A stretch of DNA of 64,000 nucleotides from Octopus sinensis (lineage: Eukaryota): NCBI RefSeq assembly GCF_006345805.1, contig NC_043000.1:73098001-73162000 (forward strand). Direction: 5' to 3'. The notes beneath the pieces were generated by a model, which did no database searches, had not been told where the DNA came from, and saw only the letters and a list, made by a program, of their open reading frames with translations. Shown one piece after another: positions 5,330-64,000 of the stretch (position 1 is the first letter of the stretch; each line of letters opens with the position of its first letter). A program made the position numbers and the translations under genes.

Positions 5330-5792
5330 ATTGGGCTTCATGGAGACAAAGTGGTTAAGTTCCTTTTGAGCAAAGGAGCCTCACAGGGGTGAAATGGCTG
5401 AGTTCCTTTCATGCATTGGGCCTCAAGGAGGCAAAGTGGCCGAGTTTGTTTCAGGTGTTGGGTCTCATGGAGACAATAACTGAGACCTTTGGCATTATGT
5501 CAAGCTCGAGAAGACCCATTAAGCCAGCAAAGTTGCAATTGTGGTAGATACTGGTTTCAAGCAAATTGGCACTCATGCCAGTGGCACATAAAAGCACTTC
5601 GGTGTCATGCTGATGGCACATAAAAACACCCATTACATTCTCAGAGTGGTCAGTGTTAGGAAGGGCATCCAACCATAGAAAACAATGCCAAGTCAGACTG
5701 GAGTCTGGTGCAGCCTTCCAGCATGCCAGCCCAGTCAAACCATCCAACCCATACCAGCATGGACAACGGACATTGAATGATGATGATAATGA

Positions 5793-9049: not shown

Positions 9050-9306
9050 CTATGCTTGAGAAGACCTGTCAAGCCAAATGAGATTGCAGTTGTGGCCAAT
9101 GGTGGTATTTCATAACTGGCACCCATGCCGATGGCAAGTAAAAAGCACACTCTACACTCTTGAAGTAGTTGATGTTAGGAAGGGCATCAAGAGTAGAAAG
9201 CATGCCAAAATTACACTGGAACCTGGTGCAGCTCCCCAGCTTACCAGTTTTGTCAAACCATCCCAGCCATGCCAGCATGAAAAATGGATGTTCAATGATG
9301 ATGATA
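9050..9306 (+). mobile_element. Diverged RTE 3' UTR copy
   Basis: gttaggaagggcatc...catgccagcatg...gatgatgat tail. Confidence 0.7.
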
Positions 9307-11469: not shown

Positions 11470-13700
11470 ATATTATGTGTTTTGTGCAATTTTTGCCTCT
11501 TTGGCCGCAGGTAAAGTGGCAAAGAATTCTTCTGGTTTGGTTACTTGCCTGTGTCCTTGAGGTGTAGTGAACACACTTTGGAACTGATTGTTCAGTATTT
11601 CACTTATCCTCATGGGATTTCCTGTGAGGGAGCCATCTTTTTGGAAGAGAGGTCCTATTCTCTGGTGCACTGTGGCTGTCTCTTTGGCAAACTTAAAGAA
11701 AGCTTTAGGGTTTGACTTTATATTTTCTATTACCCAAGCTTCTTTATTTGCACTCTCTTTTTCATGAGACTGATGCAGACTTTTCTCAATTTCCATTAGC
11801 CGAGACTTCTCACCACTTTTGGTGTGCTTGCTCAGGCGGTTCGCAATCCTTGTCCGTCATCTCATAAGAATCTTCCTTTCTCTGGGGATCCTGTTTTTGT
11901 TTTTGTGTGTGCTGGCCCTGCACACTGGGACATATTTGTCACATGGCTTGCATTATGGACATGAAGCGTTTGTGTGTCATGTCAATGTCTGGTGTGGAGA
12001 GACATTTAGGCCAATCCTGTTTGAGGATCTCTTTCTCGATCAACTAACAATTTGCTTTATGAAAGTTTAAGTTGGAGAGATTGTGGATGCTTCGTAAAGG
12101 CTGTGTGTCTGCGGGAGCTTTTGGTCCATACATAGGACAGCTCTATTATGTTGTGATCCGAGATCATTGTCGGCATCACTTTAACATTATGGATAATATC
12201 CATATTGTTTGTGAAGCAGAGATCCAGTATATTATCTGCCCTTGTTGGTTGCAGCACTATTTGCTCCATGAAAGAGGCATTTGTGAGATGGAGCAGGGAC
12301 TCTGCCTGTGCCTGCTGATGGTGTGTCATCCCTGGGAGCATTCTGCTCCCCAGGCCATTCCACATTGAGGAAGTTAAAGTCACCCATGAAGAATACACTG
12401 TTGTGTTGTTCCAGGTTGGTGAGAACTTCTATTTTTGTTAGGCAGTCTTCAAACATGTCTGTGTGATTTGGGGCATCTGGTGGGCGACAAGTAGTATATA
12501 TGACGATATTCAGTTGTCTTATGTGTACAATTTGAGTGTCACACACTGAGTTTGAATATGATAACAGGACCTGGGGCATGAGGTCATCTCGGATGTACAT
12601 TGCAACTCCACCATAGCTCCTCCCTTTTCTATCTGAGCGTATGACAGCATATTGCAGTATGTGTATTTCTGCATCTCCTATATTGGGTCCAAGATGCGTT
12701 TCTATGAGTGCCATGCATATAGCTTGATTGCATGCCACAAGGTCTCTCAGGAATGAGATTTTCCTTTTACAGTTGCCGCGCAGCAGCCCTCCTATGTTCA
12801 GTAGAAATATTTTTGTGGTGTGTGTGTTGGTGTCTATGGTGGCCATCTTGCATCTGTTGGTGGTGGCCTTATGTGGTGGTAGTTCCAGCTTTGTGTTTGT
12901 AGCCAGGTCAGCTGCTGGACAATTTTTTGTGCCATGCACAAAAAAGATTGCTGTTCAGCTGCTGCCCTTCTCACATCTGGGTGAAGCTGGCCATTTGTTG
13001 GGCTATGCAGTATCTTTTTTGAACCACACACTACATCCACATATCGTCTTTCAGGAGTAGTCAGTGCGCCATTTTACCTTCTTTGATATTTTTCTTTTTC
13101 TTTTTGTTCTCCCCGAGGGGGGGGGTTGTCTTGTGTCCATGCGGTTTTGGCAGGGCTTCTGATGTGCAAAATGACAGCAGTCTCCCTTCAGGTAGAATTT
13201 GCAGATGCTTCTGCTTTTGCCCTTGTAGCTTTTGCTGGGGTTCTTCTGTTTTTTTCTGAACAGTGTTTGTTTTAGTTTTCTTGTCTTTTACCTCTTGTTT
13301 TCCGTCGATTTTAGGGTGCTTTCCTTTTTTTGCGTTTTCAGTTGTGTTGGGGGATGGACATGTGCCATTGTTTCCCTTGGTTGCAGGTATCTCAGTTGTG
13401 TCTTTTGTTGGGTCCTGGATGCTTTCTCCATCCTTTTGGTCTTCCCTGGTGCAGTCACCTCCTAGGATGATGTCCAGAGTGTCCATGTGTTGCCTGATTA
13501 GAGAGCGTATGAACGGAGGAATTCTCGTTTCTTTCGCTCTATCTGGGCGGTGGTCCTGGATAAATCATTGCTCTTAAGCGCCGCTGTAATGATATTGTTT
13601 GGCGAGTCACCCTCGGCAATCTTCCAGGCGCGGACGAACAATTGCAACTCCCTCGCAGACCAGTTCCTTGACACCTTCGCCTGAGATACAGTGAGAATGA
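11470..13700 (-). mobile_element. 5' half of a CR1/L2-group LINE (ORF1 remnants, APE endonuclease, pre-RT linker), broken before RT
   Basis: 12232-12939 encodes LLNIGGL..ETHL..RSDRKGRSYGGVAMYI..RPP..MGDFN; PTRADNILDLCFTN..SDHNII; NIKSNPKAFFKFAK..IGPL..ILNNQFQSVFT. Upstream purine-rich tract at 13700-14030. Confidence 0.88.
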
Positions 13701-17650: not shown

Positions 17651-18023
17651 CAGCAACATAGATTGCTGTAGAAACAGATTTGATAACACAAATATTGTAA
17701 TTATCAGAGCAATGATACAATACAGAATAAAATATCAGAAATGGAAAGAAAAATAGTTAGGTAATTTTATAACAGGCTATTTTCACAAGTAAATAATTGT
17801 AAATATTACACGTTTCCTATGTTTGAAATACCTAAATTGTAAGTTAAATACAAAAAAATGGTCTGTGTACAGAATGTTAATCTTAAATTCGTTGGGTCTT
17901 TTTGTTTATTCTTTTTCATGTAAAGTTGCGTTAAGCCGCCTGCAAAATTTTGAGAAGCAAAAAACTGAAATCGGAGAATAAAACAATTTTAAGGAAAAAT
18001 ATACAAAAAAAATATTCATCGAA

Positions 18024-18370
18024 TCATCATCGTCGTTTAACGTCCGCTTTCCATGCTAGCATGGGTTGGAGAGTTCGACCGGGGTCTGGGAAGCCAGGAG
18101 GTTGCACCAGGCTCCAGTCTGATCTGGCAGTGTTTCTACAGCTGGATGCCCTTCCTTACGCTAACCACTCCATGAGTGTAGTGGGTGCTTTTTACGTGTC
18201 ACCAGCACGGGCGCCAGTGAAGGCGGCGCTGGCATCGGCCACGTTCGGATGGTGCTTTTTAGGTGCCACAGGCACGGGTATCACAACTACAATTTCCATT
18301 TGATTTTTATTTTGATGTTGATGTACTTGACTCAGTAGGTCTCCTCAAGCACAACAGGTTACCCTACGAT
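18024..18370 (-). mobile_element. RTE 3' UTR copy
   Basis: catcatcgtcgtttaacgtccgctttccatgctagcatggg start, as in the other copies. Confidence 0.85.
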
Positions 18371-30075: not shown

Positions 30076-32520
30076 CATCATCATCATCATCATCATCATT
30101 TAACGTCCGCTCTCCATGCTAGCATGGGTTGGACGGTTCAACTGGTGTCTGGGGAGCCCGAAGGCTGCACCAGGCCAGTCAGATCTGGCAGTGTTTCTAC
30201 AGCTGGATGCCCTTCCTAACGCCAACCACTCCGAGAGTGTAGTGGGTGATTTTATGTGCCACCGACACAGGTGCCAGACGAGGTTGGCGAACGGCCACGC
30301 TCGGATGGTGTTTTTATGTGCCACCGACACAGGTGCCAGACAAGGCTGGCAGACGACCACGCTCGGATGGTGTTTTTTATGTGCCACCGACACAGGTGCC
30401 AGACGAGGCTGGCGAACGGCCACGCTCGGATGGTGTTTTTATGTGCCACCGACACAGGTGCCAGACAAGGCTGGCAGACGACCACGCTCGGATGGTGTTT
30501 TTATGTGCCACCGACACAGGTGCCAGACGAGGCTGGCGAACGGCCACGCTCGGATGGTGTTTTTATGTGTCACCGACACAGGTGCCAGACAAGGCTGGCA
30601 GACGACCACGCTCGGATGGTGTTTTTTATGTGCCACCGACACAGGTGCCAGACGAGGCTGGCGAACGGCCACGCTCGGATGGTGTTTTTATGTGCCACCG
30701 ACACAGGTGCCAGACAAGGCTGGCAGACGACCACGCTCGGATGGTGTTTTTATGTGCCACCGACACAGGTGCCAGACGAGGCTGGCGAACGGCCACGCTC
30801 GGATGGTGTTTTTATGTGCCACCGACACAGGTGCCAGACAAGGCTAGCAGACGACTACGCTCGGATGGTGTTTTTTATGTGCCACCGACACAGGTGCCAG
30901 ACGAGGCTGGCGAACGGCCACGCTCGGATGGTGTTTTTTATGTGCCACCGACACAGGTGCCAGACAAGGCTAGCAGACGACCACGCTCGGATGGTGTTTT
31001 TATGTGCCACCGACACAGGTGCCAGACGAGGCTGGCGAACGGCCACGCTCGGATGGTGTTTTTATGTGCCACCGACACAGGTGCCAGACAAGGCTAGCAG
31101 ACGACCACGCTCGGATGGTTTTTTATGTGCCACCGACACAGGTGCCAGACGAGGCTGGCGAACGGCCACGCTCGGATGGTGTTTTTATGTGCCACCGACA
31201 CAGGTGCCAGACAAGGCTGGCAGACGACCACGCTCGGATGGTGTTTTTATGTGCCACCGACACAGGTGCCAGACGAGGCTGGCGAACGGCCACGCTCGGA
31301 TGTGTGTTTTTATGTGTCACCGACACAGGTGCCAGACAAGGCTGGCAGACGACCACGCTCGGATGGTGTTTTTTATGTGCCACCGACACAGGTGCCAGAC
31401 GAGGCTGGCGAACGGCCACGCTCGGATGTGTGTTTTTATGTGCCACCGACACAGGTGCCAGACAAGGCTGGCAGACGACCACGCTCGGATGGTGTTTTTA
31501 TGTGCCACCGACACAGGTGCCAGACGAGGCTGGCGAACGGCCACGCTCGGATGGTGTTTTTATGTGCCACCGACACAGGTGCCAGACAAGGCTAGCAGAC
31601 GACTACGCTCGGATGGTGTTTTTTATGTGCCACCGACACAGGTGCCAGACGAGGCTGGCGAACGGCCACGCTCGGATGGTGTTTTTATGTGCCACCGACA
31701 CAGGTGCCAGACAAGGCTAGCAGACGACCACGCTCGGATGGTGTTTTTATGTGCCACCGACACAGGTGCCAGACGAGGCTGGCGAACGGCCACGCTCGGA
31801 TGGTGTTTTTATGTGCCACCGACACAGGTGCCAGACAAGGCTAGCAGACGACCACGCTCGGATGGTGTTTTTTTTTATGTGCCACCGACACAGGTGCCAG
31901 ACGAGGCTGGCGAACGGCCACGCTCGGATGGTGTTTTTATGTGCCACCGACACAGGTGCCAGACAAGGCTAGCAGACGACCACGCTCGGATGGTGTTTTT
32001 TTTTATGTGCCACCGACACAGGTGCCAGACGAGGCTGGCGAACGGCCACGCTCGGATGGTGTTTTTATGTGCCACCGACACAGGTGCCAGACAAGGCTAG
32101 CAGACGACCACGCTCGGATGGTGTTTTTTTTTATGTGCCACCGACACAGGTGCCAGACGAGGCTGGCGAACGGCCACGCTCGGATGGTGTTTTTATGTGC
32201 CACCGACACAGGTGCCAGACAAGGCTAGCAGATGACCACGCTCGGATGGTGTTTTTTTATGTGCCACCGACACAGGAGCCATATTAGGCTGGCGATCGGC
32301 CACGATTGGATGGTGATTGTTACGTGCCCACAGCATGGAGGCCAGTCGGTGCGGTACTGGCTACGCCCACGTTCGGATGGTATTCTTGTGTGCCACCGGC
32401 ACTGGTACCACAAAGATACAAATTCCATTGATGTTCATCTATTTTGATTTTGTTTGATTTTCACTTGCCTCAACAGGTCTTCACAAGTGTCACAAGAAGG
32501 AAGGTATGCACAGGTGGACT
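30076..32520 (-). mobile_element. RTE 3' UTR copy inflated by an internal VNTR
   Basis: Canonical (CAT)n-ttaacgtccgc end and gcctcaacaggtcttcacaag upstream part flank the array. Confidence 0.88.
30257..32261. repeat. Tandem array of 32 ~62-bp units alternating A/B (16 dimers of ~124-128 bp)
   Basis: A: tgccaccgacacaggtgccagacgaggctggcgaacggccacgctcggatggtgtttttatg; B: ...gacaaggct(g/a)gcagacgaccacg...; 16 A and 16 B counted by eye. Confidence 0.95.
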
Positions 32521-37605: not shown

Positions 37606-40600
37606 ATTGTGGTGTTGGCGGTGTTATGGGCTGTGATGAGCTATGTGGTGTTGGTGGAAAGGATGACAGATGAGGTGGACGGAAGTAAGGCTTGCAGAGG
37701 CCGGCGGAAGAGTGAAAGGCACATGTGTGGGCAGGAAGCACGTGTGGTCAGCGAGCAGAGCGACAATGTTGAATTCGTGAGAGACTACTGATTTCAACAA
37801 GGTAAGGCCTTTTGTATTTCTTTCTCCCGTTGCTTCTTTTTCTGTTGTCCTTTTCCTCCATCACGCTACAAGCTATTTCGGCTCATAAAAAAAACAAAAA
37901 AAAACGAACAATGAGTGTTGCCCATATTTCGAACGAGATGATCAAACCATTTTGCGGTGTCACAGATGTAGTCGCTTGGTTGAAGAAGGTGAAGTTGGTG
38001 GTGAAGCTCCACAAAATAAGCGACCTAGTGAGTTTTATACCACTGTACTTGGATGGTTCGGCATTGGCGCTGTATCTAGAAATGGAAGAGAGGGACCAAC
38101 TTAGCACGGAGAAAATAGAAATTCGGTTGATGGAGGCCTTTGCGGAGGGAATGTTTGAGGCATACGCTTGCCTGGGGAAAACAAAATGGACTGGGGAACA
38201 GGTTGACATATTTGCCAATGAACTTAGGAGATTGGCTAAACTGGCGGGTTATGAGGGAGAGTCACTGGACCGGACGGTTAAGTTGGCGTTTGTGACTGGC
38301 TTTCCTGACAACATGTCAGTCGAGTTGCAGAAGCTTCCAAACATTCACTCGATGGCAATGGCGGACATCATATCTTGGGCTCGCGTGCTAGTTTTGTGCT
38401 GCAGAGCAACGTCGGTAGCAGCGACTGCAACAACGCAAAGTGGCCGAGCAAGGAGCAGCGGAGAGGGGTCGAAGAAAGAACATGTGCGACCATTCAAAGG
38501 ACAGTGTCAGGGCCCGCATATGGTACGAGACTGCAAGTCACCCAAGCCTGAGGTCATTTGCTGCTGGTGTCGAGAAACGGGGCATATAGCCAGTGAATGT
38601 CTGTGAGGAAACGGTCTGAGGGAGACTAGTGCGCTGGTAGTTGTCCCTTTGGATCAATAGAGGTGCGTTTATCATCATTACCTGTAGTCGACATTCTGGT
38701 GGAGGGGAAGATGTCGCGAGCCCTTGTGGATATGGGCTGTACGACAACCCTGATGATTTCAGAAGTGGCAGAGATATGGAGTGGAGAAAGCAGTGTAAGA
38801 GCAGTCGACGGAAGAGAAGTACACTGTGAAGGCGTTACAGATGTGCAGATTGTGGTGCAGGGAATAAGACTGATGCTGCGAGCAATTGTAGTTGGCCACT
38901 TGGTGGACGAGATTGACATAGTGATGGGGATGGATGCAATCACCCATTTGGGAGGTGTCACCTTTAACGAGGCCGGTGTAATGTTCGGGTTTGCGGGGAA
39001 ACCATGTATGGCGAGACCATGCACTGGCGACAACTGTGAGGAAAAGCATGCTGCACAGGCCATTGAAGATCAGGACTTTTAGGCTGTCTTCGATGGCAGT
39101 GAAGTGGCACTGGAAGGGAGAGCCCCGACGTTAAAAAATAAAGTGGGCTGCTATCAGCATACTCTAAAAGGAGATGCCAGAAGTGAGTTCGAGGGAGAGG
39201 TGAAGTGGTGGATTAAGGAGGGCATATTGATCCCTTGGGAAAAAGAAGAGAGCAGAGTCCTGCCACTGATGGCAGTGATACAGCCCACAAAGCATAAGGT
39301 CAGGCCAGTGCTTGACTTCCAAGAGCTGAATGACCACGTATCATGTCATACAGGTGGCGAGGCCACGGATGTCTACGGAGACACCTTGTGAGAGTGGACA
39401 CAGATGACAAGGGCCTCCATGATCGTCGATTTGAAGTCAGCATACCTACAGGTGCATGTGGCTGAGAAACTGTGGAAGTATCAGCTTGTCAGGTATAAGG
39501 GCTGGACGTACTGTCTGACCAGGTTGGGGTTCGGGCTGAATTCAGCGCCAAAGATTATGGCAACAATTCTCAAGGCCATCCTGGGAAAGGTGGACAGAGT
39601 AAAAAAGGCCACTAATTTGCACATTGATGATATTCTGGTGGATGAAACCGTAATGCCAGCAATGGAGGTCATAGGCCACCTGAAGAGTTGTGGACTGATC
39701 ACCAAGCCACCAGAGGCAATGGAGGGAGGTGCTGCACTGGTCCTCAAGCTATGGAGAGACAAGGTTGGTGTTCTGGCGAGGGAACGAGATCCCCGAACTG
39801 GGCACCAGCATGAGTAGACGGGAACTGTTCTCAGTGTGTGGGAAGCTGGTGGGACACTACCCGATTGCAGGATGGCTCTGGACAGCATGTAGCTTCATCA
39901 AGAGAGCCAAAGGAGTGAAGTGAAACGATAAAGTGGGGGAGAAGACGGCTGACATGATACAGGAAGTCTTGGTCAGAGTAAGAGCAGAGGATCCAGTGAG
40001 GGGCAGTTGGTATGTTCCCAAATCAAAGAGCAGAATTGTATGGTGTGACGCCAGTAGCATCGCAATAGGGGTTGTTTTAGAAGTGGGAGGTGTCATGGTG
40101 GAAGATGCAGCCTGGCTCAGGAAGACGGATGATTGCAATCATATCAATGTGGCGGAGTTGGATGCCGTGTTGAAGGGAGTGAACCTAGCCTTGAAGTTGG
40201 GGTTGAACACTATAGAAATCAGAACTGATTCGGCCACTGTACTTGGTTGCGTAACAGCAGTCATCGCCAATGAGCGGAGGGTGCGAACCAAAAGGGCCAC
40301 AGAGATGCTAGTAAAGCGTCAATTGGGGATACTGTGTGAACTAACCACTGAGTTCAATCTGAAGCTGAGTGTGATCTTTGTGCCTTCCCAGAAGAACAGG
40401 GCAGACGTCCTGACCAGGGTAAAGCGAGCCTGGTTGCAGGTGCCAGAGGATGCGGAGCAGGCTGTGGCTGCAGTATGCCGTCTGAGTGACTCAGAGTTGC
40501 AGAGATTGCATACCATGCATCACATGGGGTTGGACAGGACATTGTTCCTAGCTAGGAAAGTTGACTCCGATGTAAAAAGACGGAGTGTGCAGAGAGTGGT

Positions 40601-41342
40601 TAGCAGCTGACAGGTGCCAGTCCATCAACCCTGCTCTGGGCGTACATGAGGCGGGAAGTATTCCAGTGGACCACAGCTGGAAACGACTGGCGGTGGACAT
40701 AACACACTACCAGCAGGGTACATACCTCTCAATGGTTGACTGCGGACCAGGGCGGTTGGCCATATGGTGGGAGATGAAGACGGGACCGCAGAGGAAATTG
40801 TGAAAGTATTGAATGAGATATTCCTGGAACAAGGCCCCGTGGATGAAATACTTCTGGATAATGGCACTGCATTTCGCCTGGAGGTGCTGAAAGAAATGCT
40901 TGATGGGTGGAAGGTCAACCGCTTCTTCAGGGTGGCATACCAGCCAAGTGGAAATGGGGTGGTGGAAAGGCATCATCATACCATCAAGACCATGGCAGAG
41001 AGGGGCCACATTTCACCAATCGAGGATGTATTTTGGTACAATATGTCGCCCAGATCAAGACAGGCTGAGGAGTCGGTGCCACACAGGGAAATATTCAGGT
41101 ACAAGTGGAGGCATCCATTTACTGCATCAATGCGACCCAGGGCAGAGGAAGAGCACGCCTTCATGCAGGTCGGCTTGCTGGGGCCGGTGGAAGAGTGAAA
41201 GGCGCATACGTGAGCACGAAACACGTGTGGTCAGTGAGCAAGTGGGGTCAGTTCCAGCACAGATGGCAGAGCGACAAGACGTGTTGAATTTGTGAGAGAC
41301 CACTGATTTCGCTGAGGTAAGGCCTTTTGTATTTCTTTCTCT
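37606..41342 (+). mobile_element. Near-complete Ty3/Gypsy LTR retrotransposon with frameshifts and stops; 3' LTR partial
   Basis: Gag 37911-38606 with CCHC (CCWCRETGHIASEC); protease RALVDMGC; RT DLKSAYLQV..LGFGLNSAP..HIDDILV; RNase H WCDASS..AELDAV..RTDS; integrase H..HH.G, SGNGVVERHH. LTR-derived sequence at ~37690-37850 recurs at ~41175-41342. The LTR start position is approximate. Confidence 0.9.
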
Positions 41343-45505: not shown

Positions 45506-46748
45506 AGAAATGTTTAGTCCTAGGTCCAATTATACAAACTTAGCCATGACCATCTCATCATTTATCAGACACAGTTTCTCCAAAACATTAAAATGATAGG
45601 GAGTAGATATGAAGGAAATTTTAACTTTTGCAAGTCATGGGGATAGAATATCAAGCTTAGTGAATAATAGTAAACAACAAAACTCGTTTAATTTCGGTTA
45701 ATCATATTTTTTGTTCGAATAGTAATCTTTACATAGATGTTAGTGGATTGAGAAAATGTGTAACTTAAATATAAATTGTGAGTTAAATAGGCTAAAACGT
45801 GACAATAAGCATTCGGTTTGATAGTTATATTTTGACATTAGTCAGAAATCATGTATGCCTATAATTTGAATGTTTAAAGTCTGAAACTGAAGTATAATTC
45901 GTTTATGGATTTGGTTTACAGGATTCGGTTAAACTAAAGCGTTTGACCCAAGATTATTTATGTGTGTTGAAGCATATTCTGTTGTGTCTGGGGAGAGTCA
46001 TTTTCTTTTCCGTTTTAATATTATACAGGATCTAAATGTGAAGAAGCAGAAATGTGAAAAGCGGGTAATACCGAAATTTGGCGAATAAAACCGAAATTAA
46101 GTCGCTGCAACTCTTTCATGTTTTTTTCCTCACCTCCTCAACTCTCTTTAGACCGTATGTTTTAAAGTGATATTTTATAGAAATCGTTTACGATGGTGTT
46201 GATTAGGTAATGTTAATATTTCAGACATATATTTGAAAGAAAGAAAACACTTGTTAAAAGTTATGGGAATTGGTGATAGGATAAGAGAGAGGATGTGTGT
46301 GTGCGCGGGGCGGGAAGAATAGTCCGAAATTCTTGAAAAAAAATTGTTTTTATTATTCTAAATTTTATCATCATGAACATAGAGAACCGATCTCTACAAA
46401 ATTTCATTTAAAAATATGTATATTTTTCGAAAGTTATGAGGAAATGAAGTCAGGGAGATATTTAAAAAAAAGTAGGAAGAAAGTTTTGACTGATACTGCA
46501 ATGAAAGATAAGTCAGCAAGTGTCTATAGATCTTTTCTGTTTGGCTTACACTTTTTGAAATTTTAAAATTAAGTGAAACTTTTCGAATTTCGTATACTGA
46601 TGTTATTTTTCAAAAATGTTACAGCTGTTTAAAGCTTGAGTATTTTTATCCAATCAGAAAACAGGGTTTGGATGCTGGCATTTTTTTGCGTGATAATTTT
46701 TATTAAGCAAAATGAAAGCAAAAATTAAGGTTAATGTTGACATTATTA

Positions 46749-48232
46749 CCCGGAAACGAAATCGAAAAAAAGAAAAAAAATAGTGCAACGGGTGTTAAAG
46801 AAAAGTGTAGAAAACGAATATGAAAACGAAAATGCGCGGAAAGCAACTGGGTGCGGAGAGGACTTCGGAAAATTCACAAGATCCGAGTTTGGTACTTGTC
46901 TATTGTCGTGGTCCCGGTTTCTCACACGCGAATTCGCGCGCGCACCAGACGTAGGTACTCGATACTCGAGATCCTACGAGGTGACTTGCGCATGCGCAGT
47001 GCAGAATTCGCGCATGCGCGTTAACCGCCCCCCCAAAAAAAGGTGTTGGATTTCACTAAAAATATATGTGTGTGTGTATATATAACATTTTCAATTTTAC
47101 ACAAAAAAATTACATAGTCGCTTTCCTCGCGGATTTACAGATAAATGAATTAATTACTATTTTACAGAATAAAATTAATGAATTAATTATATAAATTAAA
47201 TAATTCTTGAAAATTAATTAATATTAATAATATTTTTTGAACAAAGTAAATAATTTATAAAACTTGGTTAATAATTTTTTTTACACAAACGCGAACGTAT
47301 ATAATTTGTGAAACTTTTTTTTTTTTACAGACGTATATATTTGGTAAACTTAATGAATTAATTTCTTCTCATCATCATCATCGTTTAACGTCCGTTCTCC
47401 ATGCCAGCATGGGTTGGACGGTTCGACCGGGGATCTGGGAAGCCAGAAGGCTGCACCAGACTCCAGTCTTATCTGGCAATGTTTCTACAGCTGGATGCCC
47501 TTCCTAACGCCAACCACTCCGAGAGTGTAGTGGGTGCTTTTTACATGCCACCCGCACAGGTGCCAGGAGAGGCTGGCAACGGCCACGGTCGGATTGGTGC
47601 CAGTCGAGGCGGCTCTGGCATCGGCCACGATTCGGATAGTGCTTTTTACGTACCACCAGTCCAGGGGTCCTGGCATTTGCCGGGTGCCACACTTGCCCCA
47701 ACATGTCTTCGCAAGCAAGGGGGTTGGCGTGGGTGCCTGTCGTGGGATGAGGTTCGATATCAACTTCGCTTGCCTCAACAGGTCTTTGTGTATAAATGTA
47801 TAAATTTTTCGCACTAAATTCTTTCCGTAGAATTTATCAAAAAACGCGCAAAATTATTCCGTAGAATTATCAAATTAAAAAACGCAAAATTAATATATTT
47901 TTTGAAATTGCAAATTATTTAGAATATAAAACAAATGAAGTTAAATTTTAAAAATAAATGTCATATACTTATACTCTGTAAGGTGCTGTGTTCACACTTC
48001 AATTTACTATTTTCTAGAAATGTTGCTTTTCTAATTGAAACAATTTTTCTCAATCTCCATTTAAAAATCCATAATGCCTCTTGAGACATATCAAAATGAA
48101 CAACTTTGAATTACGCGGCGGCGGTGGTGGTGGTGGTGTGAGGTTCTAATTTTTTTTCTGATCGCTCTTTGCCCCCCTAGATGGAGGTGTGGTGGGGAGA
48201 CAGATGAAAGATGTTTCATTCTCTTATATATA

Positions 48233-48266
<34 letters not shown>

Positions 48267-50739
48267 TTCTTAAACCTACACGATATAGTCTATAAATTTG
48301 GGATGTTTTTGAAAGATAATATATTTTGTCATCAGAATATATATACTTTCTCACACTACAATTGAGATATATTTATTTTAAATCGTTCATCTTTTCCCTC
48401 GACAACAAAAATTGGGCGCGAAAATTTTTCTAAATATTAGCGGAATGAACAACTGAGATAAAGAGGGGGCAAAGAGAGATCAGAAAAAAAAATTAGAACC
48501 TCACACCACCACCGCCGCCGCGTAATTCAAAGTTGTTCATTTTGATATGGCTCAAGAGGCATTATGGACTTTTAAATGGAGATTGAGAAAAATTGTTTCA
48601 ATTAGAAAAGCAACATTTCTAGAAAATAGTAAATTGAAGTGTGAACACAGCACCTTACAGAGTATAAGTATATGACATTTATTTTTAAAATTTAACTTCA
48701 TTTGTTTTATATTCTAAATAATTTGCAATTTCAAAAAATATATTAATTTTGCGTTTTTTAATTTGATAAATTCTACGGAATAATTTTGCGCGTTTTTTGA
48801 TAAATTCTACGGAAAGAATTTAGTGCGAAAAATTTATACATCTATACACAAAGACCTGTTGAGGCAAGCGAAGTTGATATCGAACCTCATCCCACGACAG
48901 GCACCCACGCCAACCCCCTTTGCTTGCGAAGACATGTTGGGGCAAGTGTGGCACCCGGCAAATGCCAGGACCCCTGGACTGGTGGTACGTAAAAAGCACT
49001 ATCCGAATCGTGGCCGATGCCAGAGCCGCCTCGACTGGCACCAATCCGACCGTGGCCGTTGCCAGCCTCTCCTGGCACCTGTGCGGGTGGCATGTAAAAA
49101 GCACCCACTACACTCTCGGAGTGGTTGGCGTTAGGAAGGGCATCCAGCTGTAGAAACATTGCCAGATAAGACTGGAGTCTGGTGCAGCCTTCTGGCTTCC
49201 CAGATCCCCGGTCGAACCGTCCAACCCATGCTGGCATGGAGAACGGACGTTAAACGATGATGATGATGAGAAGAAATTAATTCATTAAGTTTACCAAATT
49301 ATATACGTCTGTAAAAAAAAAAAAAGTTTCACAAATTATATACGTTCGCGTTTGTGTAAAAAAAATTATTAACCAAGTTTTATAAATTATTTACTTTGTT
49401 CAAAAATATTATTAATATTAATTAATTTTCAAGAATTATTTAATTTATATAATTAATTCATTAATTTTATTCTGTAAAATAGTAATTAATTCATTTATCT
49501 GTAAATCCGCGAGGAAAGCGACTATGTAATTTTTTTGTGTAAAATTGAAAATGTTATATATACACACACACACATATATATTTTTAGTGAAATCCAACAC
49601 CTTTTTTTTTTGGGGGGGGGGGGGGGTTAACGCGCATGCGCGAATTCTGCACTGCGCATGCGCAAGTCACCTCGTAGGATCTCGAGTATCGAGTACCTAC
49701 GCCTGGTGCGCGCGCGCGCGCGAATTCGCGTGTGAGAAACCGGGACCACGACAATAGACAAGTACCCCGAGTTTTTCTCTCATAACTTTCAGGAAAATGG
49801 GTCTTTTTTTAAATAAAATTTCTTATAAATACCGTTCTAACGGCATACATTACGATTATAACGAAATTTGTGGGTAAAAATCTTCTCCGAAGGGGTGGGG
49901 AGAGTACTTAGGAAAATTCAGAAGATCCGATTTTTTCCCTCATAACTTTAAGGAAAATGGATATCTTATAATGAAATTGTGTATAAACACCTTTCAAACG
50001 ACATGCATTACGGATGTCTAATGTGCCGTAAACCCCTTATTTTTGTTCGGAAAAGTGGGGGAGGACCCCCAAAAATGCGTTTTTGAAGGTGAGATGCGAA
50101 ACTTTATTAGCCATCTTTCTTTACCCATATTTTAAGCTAACAGTTAGCAGAAATACGTTTTCTAGAGTGTGGATTACATTGAATTGAAAATTCAAACAAG
50201 TTTGAAAAGAATAATAAGTGAAAATGCTGAAGTTATGAAAATTAGTGGTAACGAAGTCTGAACAGGAAAGAGAAAGAATGATACAAAATCCTTACAAAAA
50301 CCACGTTAGTGTTTGTGTGTGAAACAAGTAAAATACTATTAAAACAAAATATCTTTTACATACCCCTTAAAAATCGCTGAATATATTAATCCCAGATTGT
50401 GGCATATTAGGTCACTGTAGTTCAGTCATTAAAAGATATCCATTTTCCTTAAAGTTACGAGGGAAAAAATTGGATCTTGTGACTTTTACAAAATCCTCTC
50501 CCCACACATTCAGAAAAGATTTTACCCACAAATTTCGTTATAATTATAATGTATGCTGTTTGAAAGGAATTTATATGAAATTTCATTAAAAAAAAAAACC
50601 TAATTTCCTAAAAGTTATGAGGGAAAAACTTGGATCTTGTGAATTTTCCAAATTCTCCCCACCATTGCTTTCTGTGCATTTTCGTTTTCATATTCGTTTT
50701 TTTACACCTTGTTTTACACCCGTTGCACTATTTTCCAGG
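46749..50739. mobile_element. Outer long-TIR non-autonomous element (~1.1 kb without its insert), probable TA TSD
   Basis: Left end cccggaaa..atagtgcaacgggtg..aaaattcacaagatccgagttt continues after the insert as ttctctcataact; 50420-50739 is its reverse complement, ending gttgcactattttccagg|ta. Confidence 0.75.
46891..49766. mobile_element. 2876-bp foldback element with ~1.29-kb TIRs, a 286-bp spacer and an 8-bp TSD
   Basis: Arms 46891-48177 and 48464-49766 are near-identical reverse complements; termini GGTACTTGTC...GACAAGTACC; TSD ccgagttt at 46883-46890 and 49767-49774. Confidence 0.93.
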
Positions 50740-60119: not shown

Positions 60120-61780
60120 TACTGGCCCAGGCCATGTCTGACTTAACACCACCACCTGGCGAAGTCTTTCAATTCAGGATTTGGGCACCAAGGCCCATTC
60201 GAGCAGAGAGTTATTGTTTGCGGTGACATATCCTGGTGTGGGTGGTTTGTCCAGGACTGTTTGAAGGAATTTGACCAAAGACTTCTTGAATTTTGTGTGG
60301 TGAGTTTCTGTTTTGACGTGTCCTGCTGTAATGTTGAAGAGAGCGGGTCCAATTCAGGTGAAATAATTGTGCCGTATTGTTGTTATGTGATGCGATTTAG
60401 ATTTTTGTTGTGGACGGATGGCATGTGGTCCAAGCCTTGGATGTATTTTGAAGGTGATGCCAACATCATTCGGACAGTGCTGATGGAATATTTTCCACAT
60501 CATACAGATAATGTAGCGTTCACGGCGTCGTTGGAGTGAATACAGTTTCAGCTTCTCTAATCTACCCCAGTAGTCGAGGTCTGACATGCCATCTATCTTT
60601 TTTGTGATTGACTTTTGGGGAGCTTCATTTCTCATAATATTTTGTTTTGTGTAGGGAGACCACAGTGGACAGCAGTATTCAAGGTGGGGTCGGGCCAAAT
60701 TGGAGAAGAGAAGGATAATGGTGTGGGAATCTCTCGACTGGAAGGTTCTGAGAATCCAGGAACACATTCTGCGGGCCATGTCAACTTTGCTGCTTATATG
60801 TGTAGCCCAGCTTATGTTGTTGTCCACTGTTACTCCCAAGTCTCTGATGTTGTTAGATGCCATGAGAATTTCTCCAGAAGGAAGGGAGTTTCAGAGCGTC
60901 CTCCCTTCCAAAGTGGATCAGTTCGAATTTGTCTTCGTTTAGCAACATGTTGTTCCTTTCCGCCCATTGGACAACATCCAGTAGGTCTGACTGAAGGCTT
61001 ATTCAGTCATCCATGCCATTGATGACCTTCTGGAGCTTGGAATCATCAGCGAAGGTTCTGATGTTACTGTGTTTGATGGTGTCAGTAATATCATTTATGT
61101 AGATGATGAAAAGAAGTGGGCCCAACACAGTGCCTTGTGGGACACCACTGCTGACTTTGGGTGGGCTGGATTTGACTCCTTCGACTACAACATGTTGGGT
61201 TCTGTTAGACAGGAAGCACTTGATCCACTGCAGCAGCTTTCCCGTGACACCAATATTGGACAGTTTTCTCAAAAGGAATTTATGATCAACCCTGTCAAAG
61301 GCCTTGCTGAAATCAAGGTAGATGACATCAGTGTTGGAACCCTCTCCCAAGGCTCTCAAAATGTCATCAAAATGATGCAGTAGCTGCGTCAGGCAATCTC
61401 TTCCATTACGGAATCCATGCTGGTTGGAATTCAGCATATTATGACTCTCAAGGAAGTGAGTTATACGCGATCTCAGCACTCTCTCAAATACCTTAATGAT
61501 GTGAGAGGTGAGTGAGATTGGACGGTAATTCACGGCAAGCGATTTGTTTCCTTTTTTGAAAACTGGGACAACAGACTGGGATAGAAGGTCTTCTGGTATA
61601 TATCCAGCATCCAGTGAGTTCCGCCACAGATTGGCTAGAGGGGGTGCAAGTTGGTGTTGACACATCTTCAAGACACAAGCAGGGAACCTATCGGGACCTA
61701 CTGCTGAATTATGCTTCATTTCCTTTATTGCTGCTAAGACATCAGGAGCACCAAAGGTTATGTCCGATAAAGTATATTGG
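60120..61780 (-). mobile_element. CR1/L2-group LINE: RT domain and 3' end
   Basis: SAVGPD..NYRPISLTSHIIKVFE..QHGFRNGR..YLDFSKAFDRV..GVPQGTVLGPLLF..FADDSKL, then RDLGV..RPHLEYCCPLWSP..LYSLQRRRERY. Confidence 0.93.
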
Positions 61781-61811
61781 GGAGTATTTACATATATATA
61801 TATAAGTAAAT

Positions 61812-64000
61812 AAATGGCTGACCAGTTCCCAGACATCTGTGGAGGTCTATTTCGTGATGATTGTCTGCTTTACCTCGAAAACATTTCAAATCAAAAAATA
61901 CAGAAGGTTAAGAATAGATTAGTTAGGTTTTTTCATAGAATGGGCTTTCACATCGTTTTTGACGTTGAGTTAACTAAAGCTAACTTCTTAGATATTACTC
62001 TTAATTGACAAAATAACTCGTACTTCCCATACCACAAACCTTCTACAAATCTCAAGTATATTAGTTCTTCCAGTAATCACACTAGGGCACTTACTAAGAA
62101 TTTAGTTAAAAACATTTCAGTTAGATTGTCTAAACTATCCGCCAATGTTGACATTTTTAACGACCAGGCAGAATTTTATAACTCTCTTGGTTAAAGCTGG
62201 GTATAAAGAAAAAGTTACATACATTGATTCTGCTCAATCTCGTCCTTCATCTACTGTTCAAGTAAAAAAATTTAGTTGTAATAATAAGAGTGATTTTAAT
62301 TCTAATATTGTAAACAACACAAAAAATAATAAAATTCCTTTACGGGGTAAGGGAGGCAAGCGTTATAATAATAATAATAATAATAATAATGAAATTATTG
62401 TATACAGTGCTCAGGTGCACCACAACTTGTCAGAAAGTGCATATAAAGTATATGCAGTAATGTACAAATGTCTGGAAAGAGAACAATGTATGAGTCAGAT
62501 ACATGCTTGTGTGTGTATGGAGGGGAGGAAATCAGGTGTAGAGTTGGCGAATCTCAGAAAGCAAGGAAGTTTTGAAGGATGCAGTGCTCCGACAACTAAC
62601 AACTGATGCTGGCAGTTTGTTCCATGCTTCAGCAACTCTGAGCGTGAAAAAATGTTTCCGAAAGTCATGGGAGCTGTGCTGTTTTCTGATTTTGTAAATA
62701 TGTCCACAGGTGTTAGACTGGTGGAGTTTGAAAAGGTGCTCTGAGTTATTGTTTGTAAGATGGTTGATAATTTTATGGGTGTCTGCCAAGTCAGCTGCCA
62801 GATATCGAAGTTTCAATGTGGCCATGCCCAGTGAAGTAAGTTGTTCAGAATATGGCAAATGCCTGATGGAGGGTATTCTTTTGGTTGCACGTCGCTGAAC
62901 GACTTCCAGACGATTGATATCCTGGGCAAGATAGGGGTTCCAGACCGGTGATGCAAATTCCAGGTAAGGTCTTACCATAGCTATATAAAACCGCAGATAG
63001 ATAGTCGGAGAGCAGCTCACAAAGGATTTGGTGAGTGATGCCAAGACACCCTCAGCCTTCTTGACAATTTTAGCGATGTGTTTTGTCCAACGCAAATCAC
63101 TGTTGACAATAACACCCAGGTCACGTTCACACAAAGACTTTTTGAGATTAGTCTTGTGGAGGGAATAGGTGGACGCTGGGTTTCTCCTCCCAAAATGCAT
63201 GGGTACATTTGTCCACAGCCAGCTTGAGTTGCCAGTCTATGATCCACTGCTGCATTGTGTCCAGGTCTGCTTGCAATAGAGATCTATAGTGTACAGGATC
63301 TGACCTCTTTATTTCAAGGTACAGCTTGATGTCATCTGCATATTTCAGCACTGTGGCATTCTTTAAGTTGGCATCTATGTCATTAACATATGCAACAAAA
63401 GCCCATTTTTTTCACTCTAGAGGTATTTCACCGTCCTATTGAATGTTAATAGGAAAACTATCTGGTTTGTAATTCTGTATGGAAAACAAATTAAATCTAA
63501 TCTTCCTTTACAATTCCGTGAAGTGGTTGGTAAGAACTTTCCAAAAAATTCTAAATATTATTTAATTATTAATTCTCATATAATTAGGGTTGCCTTCTCC
63601 AACACAAAGAATCTTTCACAAATTATATCTTCTCATAATACCAGTCTGCTAAATAAAAATTCATTTTCTGGGAGTTCCAACATTAATTTTGTTTAGTCCA
63701 GCCCCTCACATAATAATAATAATAACAACAACAACAGCAGCAGCAGCAGCAACACTAAAAACATGGTTTTGGTCTCTGAAGACAACCCCAACAGAATTAA
63801 ATTCATGTCTAATAATTCTAAGATCAAGAATTCTATATACCAATGTAAAATTTCTTGCAGTACTGATGTCTAATCTCACTCTTATCGTTGGAACAGATAC
63901 AGAGACATCAGGAAAGGATTTGCTGATTGTTGTTGGATCTGTTTGGATAGATGATCAATGCTGATCAATGTTGCATTTCTAAATAAAATAATTAATTTGT
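61812..64000 (+). mobile_element. Penelope-like element interrupted by a LINE (PLE parts ~61812-62360 and ~63405-64000)
   Basis: GGLFRDDCL (RT catalytic motif), FLDITLN, SNH; after the insert it resumes RKTIWF..IKSNL..KNFP..INSHIIRVAFSNTKNL. Confidence 0.75.
62365..63400 (-). mobile_element. 5'-truncated CR1/L2-group LINE (second family) with a short (ATT)n tail
   Basis: KYADDIKLY..LQADLD..WQLKL..MHFGRRN..ERDLGVIV..VRPYLEFASPVWNPY..LEVVQRRATK; (aat)n at 62366-62391. Confidence 0.9.

What the first reader, a model, noticed from the sequence alone, without database searches (positions are those of the whole stretch)
46891..49766. Giant foldback transposon whose two 1.29-kb arms carry the same retroelement insertion
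Seen: about 90% of the 2876-bp element is inverted repeat. The arms differ only by homopolymer/(CG)n length and a few substitutions, and an exact 8-bp TSD (ccgagttt) flanks GG...CC termini. Each arm holds a mirror-image RTE 3' UTR copy (47370-47787 and 48849-49268) at the identical position. Known: retrotransposition hits one site at a time, and GG termini with 8-9-bp TSDs are typical of the Merlin/IS1016 superfamily, whereas hAT and P usually start (C/T)AG or CA. Inference: either one arm was copied onto the other (arm-to-arm conversion or foldback repair) after the insertion, or the palindrome was built from a single end and then transposed as a unit. Either way a DNA transposon is amplifying a LINE tail as part of its TIR. 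If transcribed it would form a ~1.3-kb nearly perfect dsRNA.
Basis: partly seen in the sequence, partly recalled or inferred. Interest (0 to 1): 0.75.

Follow-up and report, generated by a model that had tools for sequence, protein, structure and literature searches.

The report
Foldback Merlin transposon carrying retroposon tails
This is a real, young, roughly 85-copy jumping gene of the Merlin type in what appears to be an octopus genome; its two 1.3-kb mirror-image arms each carry the same piece of a very common retroposon, so it is an unusual form of a known kind of element, not a new kind.

Summary
Window 46891-49766 is a 2876-bp element with two ~1286-bp inverted arms (89% of its length). 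The arms differ by 6 substitutions plus homopolymer and microsatellite indels. They enclose a 288-bp loop and are flanked by an exact 8-bp duplication (CCGAGTTT). A paralogous copy of the host repeat at 49893-49967 has that 8-mer once and no element, so this is a true insertion.

The 27-bp terminus occurs 168 times in the 2.72-Gb genome (about 85 elements). The 2.65-3.0-kb foldback form is the commonest, and each copy has its own 8- or 9-bp duplication.

Elements of 4.3-5.3 kb share the first ~90 bp of the termini. They encode an intact 291-307-aa IS1595-type DDE transposase (Pfam E 3.5e-20).

Only arm positions 1-407 and 111 bp of the loop derive from the autonomous element. The rest, including the (ATG)n-tailed retroposon piece, was recruited and mirrored before amplification.

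Twenty-eight sites carry the same derived base on both arms, so arm-to-arm copying recurred. Arm-specific differences are also inherited, so the palindrome moves as a unit.

Not verified: the RTE identity of the retroposon piece, transcription, and confirmation by long reads.

The parts
46883..46890 (.). Left copy of the 8-bp target-site duplication CCGAGTTT
   Evidence: The paralogous empty site at 49893-49967 has this 8-mer once (D3 and D5).
46891..49766 (.). Whole 2876-bp non-autonomous foldback Merlin element (termini GGTACTTGTC...GACAAGTACC)
   Evidence: About 85 genomic copies share the 27-bp terminus (86 forward + 82 reverse, control 1/0).
46891..48176 (+). Left arm (element positions 1-1286)
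   Evidence: Self-alignment and inverted-repeat pairs I1-I6, I10.
48465..49766 (-). Right arm, mirror image of the left arm
46891..47297 (+). Merlin-derived outer part of the left arm (element positions 1-407). It is homologous to the ~650-bp TIRs of the autonomous elements, and the first ~90 bp are near-identical apart from (CG)n length.
   Evidence: BLAST against L065, L066 and L068 and printed termini.
49360..49766 (-). Merlin-derived outer part of the right arm
47369..47787 (-). Retroposon 3' fragment in the left arm. The tail ...CGTTAAACG(ATG)n reads on the minus strand and its 3' end lies at 47369-47383. Only 47369-47600 is shared with other genomic copies; the inner boundary is uncertain.
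   Evidence: (at least 4253 candidates). Word depth is about 3.5-6 million against about 50 for unique flanks.
48849..49268 (+). Mirror copy of the same retroposon fragment in the right arm
   Evidence: (I1: 385 nt, 100% complementary).
47788..48176 (+). AT-rich inner arm segment of unknown origin, mirrored at 48465-48848. The ~70 bp at 47298-47368 between the Merlin part and the retroposon tail are likewise of unknown origin.
   Evidence: The segment matched only family copies in the sequences held. The genome search scored only family copies among 303 candidates.
48177..48464 (.). 288-bp unpaired loop with a (TA)n microsatellite. All full-length copies share it, in either orientation relative to the chromosome.
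48303..48413 (-). 111-bp loop fragment derived from the interior of the autonomous element, just upstream of its transposase ORF (L065:2640-2755, 88% identity)
49767..49774 (.). Right copy of the 8-bp target-site duplication
49893..49967 (+). Paralogous empty site: an uninterrupted copy of the host repeat into which the element inserted
   Evidence: D3: 46849-46890 against 49893-49934, 88%. D5: 49767-49807 against 49927-49967, 85%. The two overlap by exactly the 8-bp target.

Best explanation
The element is a non-autonomous, foldback-shaped member of a young Merlin DNA-transposon family in a genome that appears to be an octopus. It moves by cut-and-paste. A Merlin (IS1595-like DDE) transposase, made by 4.3-5.3-kb autonomous copies elsewhere in the genome, recognises the shared termini and inserts the whole 2.9-kb palindrome, making 8- or 9-bp target duplications. 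Only the outer ~407 bp of each arm and 111 bp of the loop come from the autonomous element. An ancestor acquired ~880 bp of foreign sequence, including a 5'-truncated (ATG)n-tailed retroposon tail. That material was then copied in mirror image onto the other side (inferred: template switching or repair between the already inverted TIRs), extending the TIRs to 1.29 kb. The resulting palindrome became the master and amplified to about 85 copies, from which independent internal-deletion derivatives arose. The arms keep exchanging sequence, so they evolve in concert. Shown: family membership, copy number, TSDs, the autonomous partner, the mosaic origin of the arms, symmetric substitutions and inheritance of arm-specific differences. 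Inferred: the molecular route of mirror copying, trans-mobilisation by this particular transposase, and current activity.
For: The structure and TSD are confirmed, and an empty paralogous site exists (D3 and D5). The 27-bp terminus is found 86 + 82 times against a control of 1/0. Among 35 terminus pairs, 17 span 2650-3000 bp, 14 span 232-1742 bp, 2 carry extra insertions and 2 are autonomous-like. Of 24 copies examined, about 19 have their own TSD: 8 bp in REF, L033, L035, L041, L045, L047 and L070, with L032 matching at 7 of 8; 9 bp in L036, L038, L039, L040, L044, L048, L068 and L069, with L067 at 8 of 9 and L065 offset by 4 bp. Five copies (L034, L037, L042, L046, L049) have no TSD. Autonomous L065 (G000:C4:131877045-131881345, 4301 bp) has the same termini over ~90 bp and a 291-aa ORF matching PF12762 DDE_Tnp_IS1595 at E 3.5e-20, 73 bits against a cut-off of 27. 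That ORF has D137, D198 and E266 in the conserved blocks. L066 has an intact 307-aa ORF. Only arm positions 1-407 and loop positions 1413-1523 match the autonomous elements. Symmetric derived bases occur at 28 sites, against 81 one-arm singletons and about 0.1 expected by chance. Within subfamilies, left arms group with left arms and right with right. Short copies have different breakpoints, so they are independent deletions. Recruitment of internal sequence to extend TIRs is documented for Galileo (PMC3573991). Merlin is defined by 5'-GG termini, 8/9-bp TSDs and the IS1595 domain (PMC8101967).
Against: No precursor with the retroposon piece in only one arm was found that cannot equally be a deletion derivative (L042, L047). 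The order of events is therefore inferred. No long reads spanning the palindrome were available; the runs offered were short contigs. Transposase activity and trans-mobilisation are untested. Merlin TIRs are described as 24-462 bp, so 1.29-kb arms lie outside the published range. Five of the 24 copies examined lack a recognisable TSD.
Confidence: 0.85

Rival explanations
1. The palindrome is regenerated at every transposition from a single end (for example by a hairpin or snap-back replicative step), not inherited as a two-armed unit with occasional arm-to-arm conversion.
For: The arms of several copies are very similar (0.3-0.5% substitutions). L040, L069 and L033 have sister arms. In L050 the mirror symmetry even extends 190 bp into both flanks.
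Against: Within subfamilies, the left arms of different copies group together, apart from their own right arms (REF/L035/L044 and L037/L046/L070). Seven sites have the same arm-specific state in two or more copies. The asymmetric 288-bp loop is conserved in all full-length copies. Both arms are therefore transmitted faithfully.
Confidence: 0.08
2. The element belongs to another superfamily with 8-9-bp TSDs and long or foldback TIRs (MuDR/Foldback, hAT, P/Galileo), and its resemblance to Merlin termini is coincidental.
For: Foldback architecture and 8-9-bp TSDs also occur in MuDR/FB and P/Galileo elements.
Against: Elements with identical 27-bp termini, near-identical over ~90 bp, enclose an IS1595-type DDE ORF. 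The reference loop contains 111 bp of that element's interior. No other transposase was seen between such termini.
Confidence: 0.03
3. Assembly or hairpin-read artefact: the real locus has one arm, and the assembler or a chimeric long read created the mirror copy.
For: The arm differences are mostly homopolymer or microsatellite length changes, which are typical of long-read errors. One copy (L050) has mirrored flanks that could be such an artefact. No spanning reads could be examined.
Against: The element has distinct left and right flanks that join into an uninterrupted paralogous sequence with a single 8-mer. At least 17 loci have the same ~2.87-kb form, each with its own TSD. The arms carry 6 real substitutions, and arm-specific variants are shared between loci.
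Confidence: 0.02
4. Two independent retroposon insertions hit the two arms.
For: The retroposon is extremely abundant: at least 4253 candidates and about 70,000-fold word depth.
Against: The two pieces have the same truncation, the same mirrored position and orientation, and 100% identity over 385 nt. The same holds in every family copy.
Confidence: 0.01

Closest known systems
Merlin superfamily of eukaryotic DNA transposons (Feschotte 2004, as summarised in PMC8101967), related to the bacterial IS1016/IS1595 family
   Same: 5'-GG termini, 8- or 9-bp TSDs, a ~300-aa transposase with the DDE_Tnp_IS1595 domain in the autonomous partner, and non-autonomous derivatives mobilised in trans.
   Different: Published Merlin TIRs are 24-462 bp. 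Here the autonomous copies have ~650-bp TIRs and the amplified derivative has 1286-bp arms, two-thirds of which is non-Merlin sequence including a retroposon tail. 8-bp and 9-bp TSDs occur within one family.
Galileo (P superfamily) and other foldback-like elements of Drosophila (FB, Tetris)
   Same: Kilobase TIRs around a short middle. TIRs are extended by recruiting internal sequence and by tandem repeats (PMC3573991). Structure varies between copies, chimeric copies occur, and some copies lack TSDs.
   Different: The transposase superfamily differs (Merlin, against P or MuDR-like). The arm extension here is foreign retroposon-bearing sequence, not the element's own tandem repeats.
Other octopus Merlin elements with kilobase arms noted earlier in this scan (s1-107224, s1-106792)
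   Same: Same genome, same superfamily, and very long inverted arms.
   Different: Those arms are reported to be built from the tail of the element's own transposase gene, and the elements to be autonomous. This family is a non-autonomous palindrome whose arms hold a retroposon tail. I did not compare the sequences.
MITEs and internal-deletion derivatives of DNA transposons carrying nested or captured sequence
   Same: Non-autonomous, far more copies than the autonomous partner, shared termini, and breakpoints consistent with abortive gap repair.
   Different: At 2.9 kb it is not miniature. It is almost entirely a palindrome, with concerted evolution of the arms.

Membership tests
Merlin superfamily | Autonomous members encode a DDE transposase with the IS1595/ISXO2-like catalytic domain | tested here: met
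   L065:1624-2499(-), 291 aa, matches PF12762 at E 3.5e-20, 73 bits against a cut-off of 27. D137, D198 and E266 lie in the conserved blocks. The ORF lies between termini identical to those of the window element.
Merlin superfamily | 8- or 9-bp target-site duplications | tested here: met
   8 bp in 7 copies and 9 bp in 8 copies are exact, all with different sequences. Three further copies are imperfect: L032 at 7 of 8, L067 at 8 of 9, and L065 with a 9-mer offset by 4 bp. The empty paralogous site confirms 8 bp here.
Merlin superfamily | Terminal inverted repeats beginning 5'-GG | tested here: met
   GGTACTTGTCTATTG... at both ends of every copy.
Merlin superfamily | TIR length within the described range (24-462 bp) | tested here: not met
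   The arms are 1286 bp, and the autonomous TIRs about 650 bp. This is a descriptive range, not a mechanistic criterion (PMC8101967).
Non-autonomous derivative of that Merlin family | No transposase ORF, and termini plus some internal sequence shared with an autonomous element | tested here: met
   No IS1595 match inside the element. Arm positions 1-407 and loop positions 1413-1523 match L065, L066 and L068.
Foldback (FB/MuDR-like) elements | Associated MuDR-like (FB4/Phantom-type) transposase | tested here: not met
   The only coding partner found between these termini is IS1595-type. MULE domains were not searched genome-wide.
RTE-clade LINE (identity of the retroposon piece) | Continuity of the 3' tail with an RTE-type endonuclease and reverse-transcriptase body | tested here: inconclusive
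   All copies held are short 3' ends with the (ATG)n tail and variable 5' ends or 62-bp tandem units. The LINE ORFs in the window (12232-12939, 61003-61836) are not joined to this tail.

The most novel reading that the evidence does not exclude
These Merlin palindromes may be active generators of mirror duplication. The same arm-to-arm copying that homogenises the arms (28 symmetric substitutions) may sometimes run outward past the termini, as at L050, where 190 bp of flank is mirrored. It would then seed larger inverted duplications and rearrangements in the octopus genome. Transcripts through any of the ~85 copies would give ~1.3-kb near-perfect hairpin RNAs, which could serve as substrates for small-RNA or A-to-I editing pathways.
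Probability: 0.25. Interest if true: 0.6.

Novelty: new variant of a known kind. Interest (0 to 1): 0.42.

Why it matters
It links a complete system: an intact Merlin transposase source, a dominant 2.9-kb palindromic passenger, and many deletion derivatives. This shows that Merlin, a little-studied superfamily described with short TIRs, can produce foldback-type elements like those of the P and MuDR superfamilies. It also gives a clean natural data set for studying concerted evolution of the arms of a mobile palindrome. It shows a DNA transposon spreading a retroposon fragment by cut-and-paste, which can mislead repeat annotation and age estimates. Finally, it flags about 85 kilobase palindromes as possible sites of genome instability or hairpin RNA in an animal known for heavy RNA editing. 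None of this changes the basic picture of how such elements work.

Tried and rejected
1. A Merlin ORF lies 1.3 kb from foldback copies on contig C30. It is outside the element, only 68% identical in protein to the true partner, and the two loci are segmental duplicates (97.7% over 8.5 kb). It was rejected as the autonomous partner.

2. L031 and L043 have only one end within 4.5 kb. They contain no transposase ORF and are truncated or interrupted copies.

3. L042, L047 and the other short copies were considered as one-armed ancestors. Their substitutions are as few as in full-length copies and their breakpoints all differ. They are best read as deletion derivatives, so no precursor was identified.

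4. Reads: the only runs offered were short Logan contigs. They cannot span the palindrome or show strand or expression. The 'empty-site' joint 46886 to 49771 has sides of only 25-26 nt and is expected from paralogous host-repeat copies, so it is not evidence of polymorphism. One run guessed to be RNA has contigs on the arms and loop, but with another copy's flank. This gives no conclusion on transcription.

5. A donor locus for the inner arm segment (47800-48176): the genome search scored only family copies among 303 candidates, so this is unresolved.

6. RTE identity: window ORFs with endonuclease or RT domains are not attached to this tail.

7. After no further genomic loci could be cut out, so 68 unlisted terminus hits and other retroposon copies were not examined.

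8. The search of earlier findings by place returned nothing.
Full report
OBSERVATION. The repeat finder on 46000-50600 returns a nested series of inverted-repeat segments: 385 nt at 100%, 266 nt at 99%, 166 nt at 96%, 100 nt at 98% and 53 nt at 100% complementarity. Together they tile two arms. A global alignment of the element with its own reverse complement places the arms at 46891-48176 and 48465-49766, which is 89% of 2876 bp. The arms surround a 288-bp loop.

The arms differ by six substitutions and by length changes in (CG)n, a C/A homopolymer block, a TG/TA microsatellite, six single-base homopolymer steps and a (GGT)2 step. The termini are GGTACTTGTC...GACAAGTACC. The 8-mer CCGAGTTT flanks both ends.

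The flanks belong to a local repeat, and an uninterrupted paralogue lies at 49893-49967. There, 46849-46890 aligns to 49893-49934 and 49767-49807 aligns to 49927-49967. The two alignments overlap by exactly the 8-bp target (D3 and D5). That is a paralogous empty site, and it fixes the insertion boundaries.

THE ELEMENT IS ONE OF A FAMILY. The window is G000:C4:73098001-73162000 of a 2.72-Gb assembly with about 30 chromosome-sized contigs. Earlier notes of this scan call this genome an octopus; I did not verify the species.

The 27-bp terminus, with up to 3 mismatches, occurs 86 times forward and 82 times reverse, against 1 and 0 for the reversed control. That corresponds to about 85 elements. 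Among the 100 places listed, 35 form plus/minus pairs:
- 17 pairs span 2650-3000 bp.
- 14 pairs span 232-1742 bp.
- 2 pairs are foldback copies with extra insertions (3970 and 4916 bp).
- 2 pairs are 4301 and 5292 bp.

I fetched 26 loci. Full-length copies are colinear with the window element at 96-98% identity including gaps. They all share the same 288-bp loop, in either orientation relative to the chromosome. Short copies have different internal breakpoints and as few substitutions as the long ones, so they are independent internal deletions.

Each copy has its own target duplication:
- 8 bp, exact: REF, L033, L035, L041, L045, L047 and L070. L032 matches at 7 of 8.
- 9 bp, exact: L036, L038, L039, L040, L044, L048, L068 and L069. 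L067 matches at 8 of 9, and L065 has a 9-mer offset by 4 bp.
- No duplication: L034, L037, L042, L046 and L049.

SUPERFAMILY AND PARTNER. IS1595-type DDE domains are abundant in the genome (690 candidates). Two of the terminus pairs, plus a third element with only its left end in the stretch fetched, enclose such a gene.
- L065 (G000:C4:131877045-131881345, 4301 bp) has a 291-aa ORF matching PF12762 DDE_Tnp_IS1595 at E 3.5e-20, 73 bits against a cut-off of 27. D137, D198 and E266 sit in the conserved VDES, SDCW and DEF..W blocks.
- L066 has an intact 307-aa version.
- L068 (5292 bp, 9-bp TSD) is frameshifted.

Their termini are identical to the window element over the first 27 bp and near-identical over about 90 bp, apart from (CG)n length. 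One 136-bp subterminal block is 98.5% identical. These three features, 5'-GG termini, 8/9-bp TSDs and the IS1595 domain, are the ones that define Merlin (PMC8101967 summarising Feschotte 2004).

A different Merlin ORF lies next to foldback copies on C30. It is outside the element, only 68% identical in protein, and sits in a segmental duplication. It is not the partner.

WHAT THE ARMS ARE MADE OF. Only arm positions 1-407 (46891-47297 and its mirror) match the ~650-bp TIRs of the autonomous elements. In addition, 111 bp of the loop (48303-48413) match their interior just upstream of the transposase ORF at 88%. The inner ~880 bp of each arm is foreign.

Within that foreign part, 47369-47787 (mirror 48849-49268) is GC-rich and ends in ...ACGGACGTTAAACG(ATG)n. 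The last 232 bp (47369-47600) belong to a very abundant repeat. There are at least 4253 first-look candidates, and word depth is about 3.5-6 million against about 50 for unique flank.

Six other copies lie in this window: 830-1124, 2574-2803, 5608-5792, 9116-9305, 18015-18255 and 30084-30310. The last of these is attached to a 62-bp satellite at 30307-32251. All six end in the same (ATG)n tail and vary at their 5' ends. That is the signature of a 5'-truncated non-LTR retroposon, either a LINE tail or a SINE using it.

I could not show continuity with an RTE body. 'RTE' therefore remains a plausible label, not a result. The AT-rich segment 47788-48176 matched nothing but family copies.

HOW THE MIRROR COPIES AROSE AND PERSIST. 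The two retroposon pieces share truncation point, mirrored position and orientation, and are 100% identical over 385 nt. The same arrangement is in every family copy. So it arose once, before amplification, and independent insertions are excluded.

I aligned both arms of 14 full-length copies oriented by their loop. The site patterns were:
- 81 variable sites are singletons in one arm of one copy.
- 28 sites carry the same derived base on both arms of at least one copy. At several sites this is true of whole subfamilies, for example position 797 in L036, L037, L041, L046 and L070.
- By chance I estimate about 0.1 such sites.

Sequence has therefore passed from arm to arm repeatedly.

The tree adds a second point. 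Within subfamilies, left arms group with left arms and right arms with right arms (REF/L035/L044 and L037/L046/L070). Seven sites have arm-specific states shared by several copies. So both arms are transmitted as a unit from master copies and are not rebuilt from one end at each jump.

Some copies depart from this pattern. L040, L069 and L033 have sister arms, which suggests lineage-specific homogenisation. L041 and L048 have arms from different subfamilies, so they are chimeric.

Within-copy arm divergence is 0.3-2.4%, median about 0.7%. Between copies the median is 1.24%. On the calibration quoted for Octopus vulgaris repeats (JC 0.09 is about 25 My; PMC13282606), this would be a very young family, if that calibration applies here.

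Extension of TIRs by recruiting internal sequence has been described for Galileo (PMC3573991). That is the closest mechanistic precedent. The molecular route here (template switching or repair between the inverted TIRs) is my inference.

RIVALS.
- A foldback element of the MuDR or P type is rejected by the transposase found between these termini.
- An assembly artefact is rejected by the distinct flanks, the empty paralogue, at least 17 loci with the same form and their own TSDs, and arm-specific variants shared between loci. No spanning long reads could be examined, because the runs offered were short contigs.
- Regeneration of the palindrome at each transposition is unlikely, given the inherited arm-specific differences.

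VERDICT. The object is a new structural variant of a known kind: a non-autonomous Merlin element with foldback architecture whose arms hold a retroposon tail. The published Merlin TIR range is 24-462 bp. Earlier notes of this scan report other octopus Merlins with kilobase arms built from their own transposase tail. I did not compare them with this family, but they suggest that long arms are a recurrent trait of Merlin in this genome. Interest is moderate.

Noticed in passing
L050:1-4801 (G000:C30:12472054-12476854), with upstream sequence in L027: At this family copy the mirror symmetry runs 190 bp (97% identity) beyond both element termini into the flanks, with a 129-bp exact run. The loop is itself partly symmetric (loop positions 1-73 on both sides). 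This is either a real outward extension of the palindrome into host DNA or an assembly artefact.
   Followed up: partly
L041 and L048 (G000:C2:153393640-153396495; G000:C7:88242291-88245109): The two arms of these copies belong to different subfamilies in the arm tree. They are chimeric elements, consistent with repair from, or recombination with, another copy.
   Followed up: partly
L034, L037, L042, L046, L049: Five of the 24 family copies examined have no matching target duplication. This would fit recombination between copies or flank deletions, as reported for Galileo.
   Followed up: no
L046:2440-2917, L067:1622-3769, L070 (loop region): Three copies carry further insertions in the (TA)n part of the loop. 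In L046 the insertion is a second copy of the same (ATG)n-tailed retroposon with four 62-bp tandem units. In L067 it is about 2.15 kb and begins with another copy of the retroposon tail; the rest was not characterised.
   Followed up: partly
window 30084-32251: A copy of the same retroposon tail (30084-30310) is joined to a ~2-kb satellite of 62-63-bp units derived from its own upstream module (30307-32251). The satellite creates long spurious ORFs on the plus strand.
   Followed up: partly
window 46848-46890, 49767-50600: The element sits in a cluster of direct and inverted copies of a ~160-bp host repeat (inverted pairs 49799-49974 with 50426-50600, and 46848-46890 with 50466-50508). This is probably another small transposon or local duplication.
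   Followed up: no
window 61003-61836 (-) and 12232-12939 (-): There are LINE remnants here: an RVT_1 reverse-transcriptase ORF (E 3e-27) and an endonuclease-like ORF (E 3e-5, just below the Pfam cut-off). Window 39933-40610 has an RNase H / RVT_3 ORF.
   Followed up: partly
L063 and L064 (G000:C30:9067000-9076999 and 9405000-9414999): This is an 8.5-kb segmental duplication (97.7% identity). It holds a related Merlin gene (68% protein identity to the partner transposase) 1.3-1.4 kb from a deleted foldback copy. The two foldback copies differ in length (1812 against 1561 bp).
   Followed up: partly
L065:286-300: In the autonomous copy on C4 the 9-bp duplication (TAGAAATTC) is separated from the left terminus by four extra bases (GGTC). 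This may be a small duplication of the terminus or a repair footprint.
   Followed up: no
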